Positions 1-10,613 of a stretch of 64,000 bases of DNA are shown here, piece by piece (position 1 is the first letter of the stretch; every line of letters begins with the position of its first letter). The notes below the pieces were generated by a model that saw only the letters and a program-made list of their open reading frames with translations, searched no databases and had not been told where the DNA came from. The stretch covers positions 1,984,001-2,048,000 of the forward strand of contig CM074807.1 of the NCBI GenBank assembly GCA_037447605.1. The letters run 5' to 3'. Origin of the DNA: Zygnema circumcarinatum SAG 698-1b (taxonomy: Eukaryota; Plantae; Zygnematophyceae). The position numbers and the translations under genes are program-made.

Positions 1-2744
<2,744 letters not shown>

Positions 2745-3011: not shown

Positions 3012-3108
3012 ATTAACATTTACATTTACAGTTTTCGGAGTCGATCAAGTTCTATGTGAATTAACATTTTACATTTACAGTTTTCGGAGTCGATCAAGTT
3101 CTATGTGA
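3012..3108. repeat. Near-perfect ~48-bp tandem duplication
   Basis: attaacatt(t)tacatttacagttttcggagtcgatcaagttctatgtga occurs at 3012 and again at 3060. Confidence 0.9.
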
Positions 3109-3417: not shown

Positions 3418-4392
3418 ATGTCGAGCAGCAACAAGGAGAATAAGGCCACAATGGCGGCGGCCGACCGTATCAAGCAGGCGGCCATGAACGCCAGCAAAGG
3501 GCTCAGCCGCGCACAGGCGGAGCGCGCCGCAGCAGCTGCTGCTCGCAATGTTAACGCATACGGGCAGAAGGAGGAGGGACCTTCCAGGTGGCAGGAGCGC
3601 AAGGAGGCCAAGAGAATGATGTACTTGGAGTCCACGGAGCAGGCGGTGAAGCTCGGAGTAAGAACTCAGAAGGGATCGCAAGCGCATCCCGGAAATCAGA
3701 TGTGCCAGAAGTGTTATAAGACAGGCCACTGGACCTATGAATGCAAGAACGAAAGAGTGTATGTGTCACGGCCATCCAGGACGCAGCAGTTGAAAAACCC
3801 GAAGTTGAAGGCGAGATACATGGACGCGGCAGAGGTGCTGGATGGGCTCGATCCGAGAGCACAGCAGCGAGAAGCAATGCGAGAGGAAGAACTAGGGAGA
3901 GAGAGCGAGAAGGCGAAAGGGGAACGGAAGGAAAAGAAGAAGAGCAGAAAAAAGAAGGATTTTAGCGAAAGTGAATCTGCAAGTGATAGCGGAGATAGTA
4001 GTGAGAGTGAGAGCGGCAGCGGCGTGTCTTCAGAGTCCGATGGTTCGTCTGATTCTGATTCGTACTCCGAATCAGATTCAGAATCCGATTCAGAGTCCAC
4101 TGAAACTGAGAGACGCAGGAGGCGGCGACGCAGGCGCGCTAAGGAGAGTGAGAGCGAGAGCGAGAGCGAGAGTCTGAGCGAAAGTGACAGTGGGAGTGAC
4201 GAGAGCGACGACAGCGAAGATGACAGAAGGAAGCGGAAACGACAGGGAAGAACTCAACACAGTAATAGGAAAAAGTCGGAGGAGAAGAAACCCACCAAGC
4301 GAAGACAGCGAGATGCAGACAGTGGCAGAGAAACGGAGTCAGAAAATGAAGATAATGAACAACGAAATGGTGACAAAAAGCGCCGCAGGTAG
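3418..4392 (+). CDS. ZCCHC10-like zinc-knuckle protein with Ser/Asp/Glu- and Arg/Lys-rich tail, intronless
   Basis: GLSRAQAERAAAAAARNVNAYGQKEEGPSRWQE N-terminus typical of plant ZCCHC10-like proteins; CQKCYKTGHWTYEC knuckle followed by YVSRPSRTQQLKNPKL. Confidence 0.88.
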   Translation: MSSSNKENKATMAAADRIKQAAMNASKGLSRAQAERAAAAAARNVNAYGQKEEGPSRWQERKEAKRMMYLESTEQAVKLGVRTQKGSQAHPGNQMCQKCYKTGHWTYECKNERVYVSRPSRTQQLKNPKLKARYMDAAEVLDGLDPRAQQREAMREEELGRESEKAKGERKEKKKSRKKKDFSESESASDSGDSSESESGSGVSSESDGSSDSDSYSESDSESDSESTETERRRRRRRRRAKESESESESESLSESDSGSDESDDSEDDRRKRKRQGRTQHSNRKKSEEKKPTKRRQRDADSGRETESENEDNEQRNGDKKRRR

Positions 4393-5878: not shown

Positions 5879-8800
5879 CTAAATGTCTGCTAAAGGAGAC
5901 TGGCCTGACGATTCTCGCCAAAGCGGGGGAGCAGTCTTCGCAATGCTTGTCCGAGCAGCCATGAGAGAATGGTACCTGCAAGAGAGCAATTACAAAGGAA
6001 CGGTCAGAAATCATCAACTGCCATCGTCAAAAAACAAAAGCTGACGGCCACATTCGGACATCAGTAGGAAAATGAATGGACCGTCAAGACAGTAACCCTC
6101 GTTCCGATTAACTAACTAAAGCAAAGCGCTTGTCAATCGTTTTAGAAAATACTTCCCCCATTCCCAGTCTATGCCTTAACATTCCTGGTTCCAAGCAAGT
6201 TTCATTTTTTCCTGCAAGAGCATATCGGTGTTATTCTGTCACTATATGAATCTTCAAAAATACAGAGACATCAGATAAAAATGCTCATTAATGTGAACGG
6301 TCACCCACACACACTTTGCCCGCATTGAAGTTGGGACTGTTCAGGCTTCAACTGCTCAATGGCAGCCAACGCAGGGCCGGGTCAGGACTGAGTCCCTTAC
6401 GCAGCAAGAGATGGGAAGCCAAACTTTGTCAGGTCCAGACCGTAGTGTACGGAAGCTGCCAAGACTGGATAGAAGAAAATGTCTGCCATTGTCATGGTAT
6501 CCCCAACAAGAAAGCTTTTTTCCTGCAACCAAAGAGAGATTTGTAGAAACATGCTGGTTATGGACACTTGGAAAATTTCCACTGATGAACTGGAACGGAA
6601 GTTGGAATCTGCTTTTGCGTTTAAGAACAATGTACCAGCCTCCTGGGTCTGGTATGCTTATTTGAATCCACAGCCACTGCGATACGCACTAAGCTTCACA
6701 TAAGTTTTTTAAAATATCGCCTCCCTACCATTCGACTTATCTCCATTCCGCATTAAGCCAGTCTTCTCAATTTCTAGATTGAGGTGCTCGTCAAGATCCT
6801 ATCTATACATTCGCTCACACTGATGTTTCCCCAAGACTTTCTGCTCCAATTCACTTCCAACGGTTAATTGCTTGCCAGAGTCTTGTCCTTTTGTATTGGC
6901 CCTTACCTTTAGGTACCCCTCCCAAAGTTCCAACTCCTTTCGAAATGCCGCTTTTTTCATTGCCCGTGCTTCGTTGTCTGAAGGCCCGTGGGATTCATTC
7001 GCAAAATGATCCAGCACCTCAGCTGCAACCGAGCTCATTCGAGGCACAAGGTCAGGAAGTGAAATACCACGTAGCAGTCAATCTAGCAATTCCATATCAT
7101 GATGCAGGGGAGAAAGTGAGCAAGCTGATACATATTGCAGTTGACTATGCGTTACTGGAACGATACAGAACATGACGAACAAAACAATAGCCTGAACACT
7201 GATTGCAAGCACTAAATAACATGGCTCAGTTGGAGATAAGGTACTCACACATGAACAACAACTGCAAAACCAGATTGTTCGCACAAATAAATGGATAAAA
7301 AAAGCAAACAGAAAAGAAAGGCAATTCATCCAGCACAAATCGGTTTATGACGAGGAATAGTTCTGCCGCCTACAAACTACAATCAGGACCAAATGACACA
7401 CTCCATAAATCCATATTCCAACAAGCTTCGCAACTGAAGCAATTTTTGTACCAGCAATAGATATTATGTCTCCGGCAACAGCCTATGAAACGTGGTGGGA
7501 GGACGCTCACAATGCAGTGCCTCATAATGGGTGCTCTCATACATGCGCTGCAGTACACTCGTCCTAAGGTGAGCCTCCTCCGGAATAAGCAGTGGTCCTC
7601 TGCATCGCCAAGTACGCAGGTTTCTTAAGAAAAATTGCTTCAGTATCCAAAAACACTCAGACTACCCTTTGCTACAGAACTTATCGGCAAGTAAGGATAA
7701 AGGAGGCTGCAATATTGAAACTGCGTGAGAATTACTTGTACATAAATAAAAACACAAACACATTAGATATATACATAACATATGCACACAGAAACAAACG
7801 GTGGCTAAGTAAGCCCGTCTCACATTACACTTGCCTGCTAGAATACGCCCAATCCAAGTACTGACAGGCAGCTCCCGATTCACAGACTACCAGGTCTCCA
7901 TCTACAAAGGTTGGCACCTGTCACAATACAGAACGTCAAGTTAGTGCAACGGGGCGGCTAACAGATTCAGAGGAGATGTAGGACCGACAGACCTACATAT
8001 GTGAACACGTCAGATCTACCAACTGCGAACAGGTGTGCCTAATGACTCCAAGGCAAAACATTTCTAAAATTTCTCATGGACTATGCTCTAGTTGAACCAT
8101 CAAATGAACGAACATGAACAGAGCTCCCGGGAATGCCTGGCTTCGTGGATTGAGAGCCGCTAATTCTCCTTCATAATGCTCTCGTTTTGAAAAGCTGCAT
8201 ACCAATGCCCCCTCCCTCAGTGCCTGCAGTCAGACAAGATTTTCTGCATAGGAACAATTGAGCAACGTGCATCTGTCATTGCAGAGATAGAAACCGAACT
8301 TCCCACGGAAGCAGCTCGGTTTGTGTGGCACGTTTCATTGAACCTCCTCCGCAACTTTTTTGAACAGGCGAATAACAGTCGTGACAATAGCGATAACGTA
8401 ACCACATGCAGTTCCCTCGCTACCAAGAAAAGTCTCCTCATCCCACCACACACAAGAGGAAAACCCAGCACGGAAAAAAACTCGTGCATTTGCTAACTCC
8501 GAACGTGTAACCATCACAGTCAGAAATTTATTCTTTCATTGGCGAGAGACTACCCACAGCTGTTCAACAACATCGTTGTTAGAAACTGGTTAAGCGACGT
8601 ATGCTGCCTGACATAAGACACTAGGATACACAAGGCTCCAGCAAATAACATGATCCACTATACTTTTGCTCCCTGTGACATCAAGTTTGTGAGATTAGAA
8701 TCGTGGGTCATGTCTGCAGTGCGTTTTTGCGTCGGTCAAATTTGAAAACAGCTCTAAAACTAGACCCTTGGATTTAGAAATCTGAAGCACTCCCTGACGA

Positions 8801-10613
8801 TAATAACGCTAACATGTGCAAGGTTCCATAGACAGGCACGGTGGATGAAATACATAATGAGCAGCAAAACCACATTCAGGCAAAACCAGGGAGAAGAGAA
8901 TCCATACTCCAGTAGGATAGGCTCATAGTCAACGAATTTTTCTTCAAGAGTGATTTGAACTCGCCAACACTGATAAGAACCAGATGACAGAAATAATCTC
9001 CGGTGCCCTTTTTCCTGCATGCATGCAAAAAGCAAGGAAAGGCACCAAGACAAGGAAACACGTCTTAGGAAAGAGCACGTGCTCTCGACTTGCTACTTCT
9101 TCAAAGTAAAGGCGAACGTTAAGCACAGACTTTGAGCTTGCAACTTCAAAACTGTAACGTCAGTTAATCATATTTAAAGAAAAAAGACAACGAATCTAAA
9201 TTGATTCGTCATACCACCACTGGCAGCTTGCGTATATAACTTTAAGAGCAGTGGGGCTTCGTTTGGCTAATTAAGAATTCGGGTTGTTTTAAAACTTCTT
9301 ATTCCATTCTGATGCCTCAGAATTCTCCAACCGTAGCCTAACCCACACACAAAGCTGTTGGTCAGCAGACTTGTGAATCACAAAAATGTGGGAGGAACGG
9401 AACAGTGAGAGAATCATTTTCTACCTGCACATTTCTTGAGTGTTCTCCGTTTTCAAGAAGCAGTATATCCTTCGCCTCACCGGTCTGATCCCTTTCGGAG
9501 CCCATTTGTAACCCCATCATGGCAGAGGAATCCATAAGTTTTTCCACAATCAGAGCCGCATCGTCTGCTTGCACTGCAGAATCTAGAAGGCTGGCCTCCT
9601 GCACCTCCTCCTTTTTCTGGGCTGAAGAAGCATGCTCTGGTGTTTCCAATGGCATCAGCTCAAAAGCTTCCACTCCAGACTCCGGCCTTTCCGGCATCAG
9701 GCCACTGTCTACTTGTCCAGTAACTGCTGCCGGTTCTGCTGGTTGGGCAGCAGCCCTGCCCCGAGTTCGCCCTTCACGAATTGGCAAGTTGCGCCTCTCC
9801 ACTGTAGCTTTTCCTAAACTCTTCTTGCGTACCTCCTTTTTCTGTGGAGCAATGCGAGGACTTTCCTGATCAATCACCACGACAGCACGGCCCCCAATAA
9901 CTCCTTTCTTGTTACGACTTGCATGCTTTTCACAGAAACCGAGGCCATCCATACGACGATTTTTGCACCGCCAATCCTTTCCGTCTGATCGCTTGCAACG
10001 CACTTCATCAGGAATTCCTAGCAATGAAGCGGTTCTTTCTTGAACAGTTCCAGTGCTTTTTGGACGTCCGGCCGGCCGACCAGTTTTACCCTTGCTCCTC
10101 CTCCTGCCTCCCAGCGTGCTTTTCCTCTTGCGCTTCATTCCGGTTTTTGCGACCTCCCCGACCTCCTGCACGCCAAAATGCAGGGGAAACGTGTGCAAAT
10201 GCAGCAAGGTGATTGGCCGGATGATTATTATACAGCGCGCTCTCTCGCTTGCAGACAAGCCAATATAGTGCTGTAAGCATTAGCGGAATAGCTGCATCAG
10301 CATGAAGTGGACAAACGAAACGAGGGCATACAGATTTCGCAGGCTTGAAGGCAGCGCTTTCTGCCGGTGTTTTTTCAATCCATTTGTTCTCGCCTCCATT
10401 GGCTTGATCTGCAGTGACCGTAAGGGTGCTATGCCGCATGGGATTAGGTCTAATTTTGTTCATAGGACACGCTTGGAGGGCCTCGAAAGCGCTCGCTAAG
10501 GACGGCGCCTTCTTCTTAGTCGCAAGCGGGCCAGGCTTCCCTCCCGCCCTCCTCGCCGACCCGTCCTCGGCTCTCTCGCCCGCCACGTCCTGCTCCGCCT
10601 CGACCTCCGCCAT
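5879..10613 (-). CDS. WRC-domain / glutathione S-transferase (rho-like) fusion protein; exons 10613-10332, 10165-9425, 9014-8908, 8194-8137, 7917-7835, 7599-7511, 7022-6907, 6522-6401, 5975-5879
   Basis: Exon 2 encodes RCKRSDGKDWRCKNRRMDGLGFCEKH (WRC, C-x9-C-x10-C-x2-H). Exons 3-9 encode LSSGSYQCWRVQITLEEK, LNPRSQVPTFVDGDLVVCESGAACQYL, QRMYE, ELELWEGYL, FLVGDTMTMADIFFYP and PPLWRESSGQSPLADI*. All intron phases are compatible. The GST part is more certain than the fusion. Confidence 0.75.

What the first reader, a model, noticed from the sequence alone, without database searches (positions are those of the whole stretch)
5879..10613. Putative nuclear WRC zinc-finger / glutathione S-transferase fusion protein
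Seen in sequence: exon 2 carries a basic NLS-like stretch (KRKRK...RRRSK), an AT-hook-like GRPAGRPK and a complete WRC motif. It ends in a phase-0 donor (CAG|GTAG, 9425) that matches a phase-0 acceptor (CAG|GAA, 9014) opening a full ~220-aa GST domain, and all 8 introns keep frame to TAG at 5879 (~560 aa). Established: WRC is known from GRF transcription factors (with QLQ) and JMJ24-type demethylases. I know of no WRC-GST architecture. Inference: a chromatin/DNA-tethered GST that could couple glutathione or electrophile status to transcription.
Basis: partly seen in the sequence, partly recalled or inferred. Interest (0 to 1): 0.85.

Follow-up and report, generated by a model that had tools for sequence, protein, structure and literature searches.

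The report
Expressed WRC finger–rho-like GST fusion
A green alga close to land plants makes one spliced mRNA that joins a plant zinc finger of a DNA-binding type (WRC) to a glutathione transferase most like the fish and clam rho class; the same fusion occurs in a second, diverged transcriptome, so it looks like a conserved, undescribed nuclear redox protein whose function is untested.

Summary
The fusion is real. Nine exons (10613 to 5879, minus strand) encode 564 aa. Spliced contigs from four independent studies show all eight introns; three show intron 1. All four show the WRC–GST junction 9425/9014, which far outweighs the unspliced form, so the "two separate transcripts" rival fails as the main form. 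Pfam finds WRC in exon 2 and GST_N/GST_C in exons 5 and 8. The WRC is of the JMJ24/JMJ28 type, not the GRF type. The GST is rho-like (clam structure 3QAV). A 751-aa EukProt protein (P0113, organism not shown) has the same layout: a shared LASAFEALQ motif, a basic patch, the WRC, an acidic linker and a GST 53% identical. The fusion is therefore conserved in at least two lineages. The window keeps the catalytic-position serine; P0113 has aspartate there, so catalysis may not be the conserved job. The AT-hook is not supported. The precedent is the nuclear GST–Myb fusion GSTT3L of Arabidopsis; I found no paper describing WRC plus GST. Localisation, DNA binding and activity are untested. Earlier notes of this scan flagged the rho-like GST on this stretch and a possible standalone paralogue 353 kb upstream. 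Verdict: new variant of a known kind.

The parts
10332..10613 (-). Exon 1 (94 aa): low-complexity N-terminus with the short motif LASAFEALQ (aa 39-47), shared exactly with homologue P0113 (aa 178-186)
   Evidence: the intron 1 joint is seen in X2, X4 and X6
9425..10165 (-). Exon 2 (247 aa): basic NLS-like patch, WRC zinc finger (aa 52-87; C-x9-C-x10-C-x2-H; DWRC subtype), then a basic and acidic linker that is probably disordered
   Evidence: Pfam WRC E 1.7e-11; charge profile and DWRC count
9015..9424 (-). Intron 2 (410 nt, phase 0), which joins the WRC exon to the GST; it holds the stop at about 9362 and the ATG at 9020
   Evidence: the joint is seen in all four runs; unspliced share 1-17%
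8908..9014 (-). Exon 3: GST strand 1, helix 1 with the catalytic-position Ser (SGSYQCWR), and strand 2
   Evidence: best PDB hit 3qav rho-class GST
8137..8194 (-). Exon 4: GST helix 2 region up to NPRSQ; followed by a GC-donor intron
7835..7917 (-). Exon 5: cis-Pro, Glu-Ser G-site motif and helix 3; followed by a GC-donor intron
   Evidence: Pfam GST_N; 21/27 identical to P0113
7511..7599 (-). Exon 6: GST linker and helix 4 (QRMYE motif, as in rho GSTs)
6907..7022 (-). Exon 7: GST helices 4-5
6401..6522 (-). Exon 8: GST C-terminal domain, N-cap motif and helix 6
   Evidence: Pfam GST_C
5879..5975 (-). Exon 9: rho-type C-terminal tail (PPxW) and TAG stop

Best explanation
One gene encodes a nuclear, chromatin-directed GST. 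SHOWN: a single spliced mRNA encodes motif + basic patch + JMJ24/28-type WRC finger + long linker + complete rho-like GST, and a diverged homologue keeps this layout. INFERRED: the basic patch imports the protein into the nucleus. The GST domain dimerises, as GSTs do, and so presents two WRC fingers on flexible arms that bind DNA or chromatin. The GST pocket binds glutathione, glutathione conjugates or small hydrophobic ligands at those sites. Because the homologue lacks the catalytic-position Ser while keeping the rest of the fold and most G-site residues, the conserved role is more likely ligand binding and dimerisation (a redox- or ligand-sensitive transcription modulator) than bulk detoxification. 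The window's copy may still be an active transferase or peroxidase. Origin (inferred): intron-mediated joining of a WRC-bearing N-terminal module to a duplicated standalone rho-like GST, in a streptophyte alga.
For: The junction is present in four studies and dominant over the unspliced form. P0113 was the only one of 141 WRC proteins to match all seven GST exons, and Pfam gives it WRC + GST_N + GST_C. It shares the LASAFEALQ motif (8 of 2000 shuffles reach the score), a WRC with 22 identities over about 36 residues, and a GST with 117/219 identities, while the linkers align no better than shuffles. That pattern points to selection on the domains. All four Zn ligands and the residues equivalent to R201, W210, R211 and C212 of the GRF DNA interface are kept (bioRxiv 10.1101/2025.01.03.631214). 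DWRC occurs in 11 of 255 WRC motifs, including Beta vulgaris JMJ28-cluster proteins. JMJ28 binds DNA sequence-specifically (PMC13084085), and its WRC is essential for chromatin targeting. The cis-Pro, Gln and Glu/Asp-Ser of the G-site are kept in both fusions. GSTT3L is a precedent.
Against: There are no data on localisation, DNA binding, GSH binding or activity. The GRF signature residues G200, K209 and R225 are V, D and K here. A single WRC may bind DNA weakly or act in protein contacts. The catalytic-position residue differs between the two fusions (Ser and Asp). The Lys/Gln after the conserved His is Tyr in the window. Only two members are known, and P0113's organism is not shown.
Confidence: 0.5

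Rival explanations
1. The protein is a nuclear detoxifying enzyme. WRC and the basic patch only localise an active rho-like GST or glutathione peroxidase near DNA, where it removes lipid- or DNA-derived hydroperoxides and electrophiles, with no regulatory output (the repair hypothesis offered for GSTT3L).
For: The window keeps Ser at the catalytic position and the G-site motifs. The homologue's GST folds confidently onto 3QAV (pLDDT 85, TM 0.83). Dixon et al. raise this role for GSTT3L.
Against: The homologue has Asp at the Ser position, although some plant GSTs work without the Ser (PMC6540824). A plain NLS would be enough for localisation; conservation of the WRC and the LASAFEALQ motif suggests targeting and partners.
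Confidence: 0.27
2. The GST domain is a non-enzymatic dimerisation or protein-interaction module of a WRC transcription regulator and does not sense glutathione (as in SspA, EF1B-gamma or Ure2-type GST folds; from my own knowledge).
For: Loss of the catalytic Ser in P0113 and further G-site changes. The strongest conservation lies in helix 3, a dimer-interface region by general GST structure: 12 consecutive identical residues.
Against: The window keeps Ser, Gln, cis-Pro and Glu-Ser. Both copies keep the full rho-type tail that helps form the substrate pocket.
Confidence: 0.17
3. The fusion is a tolerated, lineage-restricted accident: it works as an ordinary GST and the N-terminal part is dispensable.
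For: Only two instances were found, possibly both from one genus. The linkers are not conserved. Contig depth is higher over the GST exons than over the WRC exon in all runs, though 3' bias can explain this.
Against: The WRC ligands and the 9-residue N-terminal motif are intact across a divergence that took the GST down to 53% identity.
Confidence: 0.05
4. There are two separate genes (a WRC mRNA stopping at about 9362 and a GST mRNA from ATG 9020), and the fusion is a prediction artefact.
For: An in-frame ATG lies at 9020 and a stop at about 9362. One run has a contig across the whole of intron 2 at 17% of the total (X4).
Against: The junction is in all four studies. In X1, X2 and X6 the depth of bin 8949-9119 equals what exon 3 alone predicts (82.3, 24.5, 19.2), so no contig carries ATG 9020. 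An independent fused homologue exists. A minor GST-only isoform cannot be excluded with contigs.
Confidence: 0.01

Closest known systems
Arabidopsis GSTT3L / GSTT2L (theta GST + C-terminal Myb-like domain; Dixon et al. 2009, PMC2657551)
   Same: A GST fused to a DNA-binding-type domain. It is nuclear, binds nucleic acid, and was proposed as a redox-sensitive transcription regulator or DNA hydroperoxide repair enzyme. It is lineage-restricted.
   Different: Different GST class (theta, not rho-like), different domain (Myb-like, not WRC) and opposite order (GST first). GSTT3L is a long splice variant beside a peroxisomal short form, whereas here the fusion is the dominant transcript. An independent origin is inferred.
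Rho-class GSTs (fish Gstr, Laternula elliptica 3QAV) and related algal and bacterial rho-like GSTs
   Same: Best sequence and structure match: P0113 GST vs 3qav E 6.5e-40, next 1e-16; Foldseek TM 0.83, next 0.72 or less. Shared NPRxQ, QRM(Y/F)E and PPxW motifs. The window's exons are 38-39% identical to fish rho.
   Different: Rho GSTs are standalone proteins of about 225 aa. The GSGSPPCW motif is altered. The clade with fish rho is only weakly supported (83/79). Rho is not among the 19 Archaeplastida GST classes of PMC9937507, which did not sample Zygnematophyceae; I did not compare with its algal classes Ala/Alb/Alc/Cr1/Kn1.
JMJ24/JMJ25/JMJ28 (KDM3-type JmjC proteins with an N-terminal WRC)
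   Same: The WRC subtype (IPDE.RCKRSDGK.WRC; DWRC as in JMJ28-cluster proteins) and a finger upstream of an enzyme-fold domain.
   Different: No RING/zf-4CXXC or JmjC domain; the C-terminal domain is a GST.
GRF transcription factors (QLQ + WRC)
   Same: WRC CCCH finger with the core DNA-contact Arg, Trp, Arg and Cys.
   Different: No QLQ domain, and the GRF signature residues G200, K209 and R225 are absent.

Membership tests
WRC domain (PF08879) | C-x9-C-x10-C-x2-H with the WRC motif; Pfam score above cut-off | tested here: met
   44 bits vs cut-off 28.6; motif shown
WRC domain (PF08879) | Binds Zn and DNA | not testable with these tools
   shown for GRF WRCs; inferred here
GRF transcription factors | QLQ domain upstream of the WRC | tested here: not met
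   no Pfam hit in exon 1 or upstream in exon 2 at E 10
GRF transcription factors | GRF signature residues E198, G200, K209, R225 | tested here: not met
   D, V, D, K in the window
JMJ24/JMJ28-type KDM3 proteins | JmjC and RING-like domains C-terminal to the WRC | tested here: not met
   the spliced exons continue into a GST and stop at 5879; P0113 has only WRC and GST
Cytosolic GST superfamily | Thioredoxin-like N-domain plus helical C-domain, cis-Pro, Glu/Asp-Ser, N-cap motif | tested here: met
   Pfam on single exons; motifs; homologue model
Rho-class GST | Closest by sequence and structure to rho enzymes, with the rho C-terminal tail | tested here: met
Rho-class GST | Monophyly with animal rho GSTs | tested here: inconclusive
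   P0113 GST + P0171 + fish rho group at 83/79, not starred; small sample; the window's own GST was not in the tree because the joined sequence was not built
Rho-class GST | Ser at the start of helix 1 (zebrafish position 13; catalytic role from my own knowledge) | tested here: met
   Ser in the window; Asp in the homologue P0113
Rho-class GST | GSH-conjugating activity and homodimer | not testable with these tools
   needs an assay
AT-hook | RGRP core, Pfam AT_hook match, conservation | tested here: not met
   cores are TGRP and AGRP; no Pfam hit; not in P0113
GSTT2L/GSTT3L GST-Myb fusions | [quoted passage not shown] | tested here: not met
   rho-like GST with an N-terminal WRC

The most novel reading that the evidence does not exclude
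This is a family of sequence-specific transcription regulators in streptophyte algae. A GST dimer acts as a built-in glutathione or electrophile sensor that controls DNA binding by two tethered WRC fingers: a one-protein redox switch in the algal sisters of land plants, independent of GSTT3L.
Probability: 0.25. Interest if true: 0.82.

Novelty: new variant of a known kind. Interest (0 to 1): 0.64.

Why it matters
How glutathione status and reactive electrophiles reach transcription in the plant nucleus is an open question. The only GST-plus-DNA-binding-domain fusion I found described (GSTT3L) has no established function and was not found outside Arabidopsis. Here is an independently built one, transcript-confirmed and conserved, in a close algal relative of land plants that lives under desiccation and light stress. 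It is directly testable: the WRC gives targets by DAP-seq, and the GST can be assayed or mutated. The natural Ser/Asp pair at the catalytic position separates catalysis from binding. It also places a rho-like GST, a class known from aquatic animals, in streptophyte algae.

Tried and rejected
The word-index search with the exon-2 ORF found nothing; its length limit (534 aa) excludes the fusion anyway. The search for long proteins (413-1314 aa) with this GST found only P0113 and an unrelated beetle GST. Recall of that tool is low (only four fish-type rho hits), so absence elsewhere is weak evidence. P0113 has no contig or accession on record. Metagenome and bacterial scans gave only standalone GSTs with no WRC nearby; a first attempt was rejected for lack of conserved columns. 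Plasmid tblastn gave only generic GSTs. Atlas feature searches scored under 0.9 and showed WRC-only or GST-only clusters. A mixed alignment of all parts was misaligned and discarded. The fold of P0113:160-751 resolved only the GST; its N-terminal half had no alignment depth, and even the WRC was low-confidence, so it does not prove disorder. Paper searches found no WRC-GST description. The Zygnema genome paper and its held supplements, some of them cut, do not mention it. The 3QAV paper was not held. The sample behind P0171 could not be named. The bacterial promoter scan does not apply here and showed nothing. Rejected: separate genes, AT-hook, GRF or JMJ membership, and a Trinity chimera for P0113 (the window shows the same layout independently).

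Full report
Observation. On the minus strand, nine exons run from ATG 10613 to TAG 5879: 10613-10332, 10165-9425, 9014-8908, 8194-8137, 7917-7835, 7599-7511, 7022-6907, 6522-6401 and 5975-5879 (the end of exon 5 was fixed). They sum to 1695 nt, or 564 aa plus stop, with matching phases. Introns 4 and 5 have GC donors. Searched exon by exon, Pfam finds WRC in exon 2 (E 1.7e-11), GST_N in exon 5 and GST_C in exon 8.

Transcripts. Seven public runs hold the stretch; none is on record as RNA. The four that I laid, from four studies, are clearly spliced. Introns 2-8 are skipped in all four, and intron 1 in the three that reach it. The WRC-GST junction has contig depth 216, 64.5, 49.3 and 50.5, against 2.9, 0.7, 10.1 and 4.0 for unspliced intron-2 contigs. 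That is 1-17% unspliced, of the same order as introns 6-8 (0-10%). In X1, X2 and X6 the depth of the bin around 9015 equals what exon 3 alone predicts, so no contig includes ATG 9020. Contigs drop rare forms and cannot show starts, so a minor GST-only isoform remains possible.

Organism. Earlier notes call the genome a conjugating green alga of the genus Zygnema. The count of 1177 windows on 71 pieces fits the 71-Mb Z. circumcarinatum assemblies (PMC11096116). Three 2017 runs with the same species label hold none of the words, which fits the strain later split off as Z. cf. cylindricum. This identification is inference.

A second fusion. An HMMER search of exon 2 against 1.84 billion representatives gave 141 WRC proteins. 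Only one, P0113 (751 aa, a EukProt Trinity ORF, organism not shown), matched all seven GST exons. Pfam gives it WRC at 316-349 and GST at 525-732. It shares three things with the window: the exact 9-mer LASAFEALQ followed by PM; a basic KRKR patch before a WRC with the same GKDWRC; and a GST with 117 of 219 residues identical, more than any other homologue. The linkers align no better than shuffles but keep the basic-then-acidic charge order. The layout has thus survived deep divergence. Whether P0113 comes from a second Zygnema species or another streptophyte alga is unknown; its header style matches a Coleochaete scutata EukProt record. No other long protein with this GST was found. P0113 ranked only 113th in the WRC search and the word search has low recall, so more members may exist.

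The GST. Exon 3 hits the clam rho-class structure 3QAV first, and exon 8 hits it third. The P0113 domain matches 3QAV at E 6.5e-40, against 1e-16 for the next hit. Its model (pLDDT 85) superposes at TM 0.83. Its nearest standalone relatives are P0171 (44%, from run ERR2041114, with an in-frame stop upstream), fish rho GSTs (37-40%) and bacterial rho-like proteins. The tree groups it with P0171 and fish rho at weak support, so 'rho-like' is the safe label and no donor can be named. At the helix-1 position that is Ser in all seven standalone homologues, the window has Ser and P0113 has Asp. Gln, cis-Pro and Glu/Asp-Ser are kept in both. Rho is not among the 19 classes listed for Archaeplastida (PMC9937507), a survey without Zygnematophyceae.

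The WRC. All four zinc ligands are present. GRF WRCs fold on Zn and bind DNA through G200, R201, K209, W210, R211, C212 and R225 (bioRxiv 10.1101/2025.01.03.631214). The window keeps R201, W210, R211 and C212 and has V, D and K at the GRF-signature positions. Its nearest WRCs are of the JMJ24/25 type. The DWRC variant (11 of 255 motifs) also occurs in JMJ28-cluster proteins, and JMJ28 targets chromatin sequence-specifically through its WRC. The AT-hook is not supported.

Mechanism. Shown: one mRNA, the two domains, a conserved layout and intact ligand residues. Inferred: nuclear import; a GST dimer carrying two WRC fingers on flexible arms; and binding of glutathione or ligands at chromatin, modulating transcription (0.5). 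The rivals are a DNA-proximal detoxifying enzyme (0.27), a pure dimerisation scaffold (0.17), a tolerated accident (0.05) and separate genes (0.01).

Comparison and verdict. It works most like Arabidopsis GSTT3L, a nuclear theta-GST-Myb fusion for which redox-sensitive transcription control or DNA hydroperoxide repair was proposed (PMC2657551). It is not a member of that group, nor of the GRF or JMJ families. I found no description of WRC plus GST. The architecture table of the WRC preprint is an image that I could not read. It is a new variant of a known kind: real, expressed, conserved in two lineages, function untested. Interest 0.64.

Noticed in passing
window 8907-8195 (intron 3): This intron is retained in all four runs at 15-25% of the total, more than the other introns measured. 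Read-through would stop near 8762 and give a WRC protein without a functional GST; this may be regulated retention or nonsense-mediated decay.
   Followed up: partly
window 8136 and 7834: Two consecutive GC-AG introns, both confirmed by joints in four runs.
   Followed up: yes
window about 10499-10460; P0113 178-190: The short motif LASAFEALQxxPM is conserved in otherwise unalignable N-termini and has no Pfam match; it is a candidate partner-binding helix.
   Followed up: partly
window 3418-4392 (+): Intronless ORF for a CCHC zinc-knuckle protein with a Ser/Asp/Glu/Arg-rich tail, convergent with the fusion gene. An X4 contig of 2874 nt runs about 2.4 kb beyond 5700, so the 3' UTRs may overlap.
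   Followed up: no
window 1-2742 (+): 3' part of a multi-exon gene that looks like a protein arginine methyltransferase (read by eye).
   Followed up: no
window 3019-3108: Perfect 41-nt direct repeat, two copies 49 nt apart, between the methyltransferase-like gene and the zinc-knuckle gene.
   Followed up: no
L001 136-789 (P0171, run ERR2041114): Standalone rho-like GST, 47% identical to the window's GST exons, with an intact GSGS motif; the organism was not identified.
   Followed up: partly
L003-L007: Rho-like GSTs in Myxococcota and Binatota MAGs. L003 lies on a 32% GC contig and groups with the eukaryote-like sequences.
   Followed up: partly
ESM Atlas row 5: A 452-aa isochorismatase + rho-like GST fusion cluster, mostly Ascomycota: this GST type enters other fusions too.
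   Followed up: no
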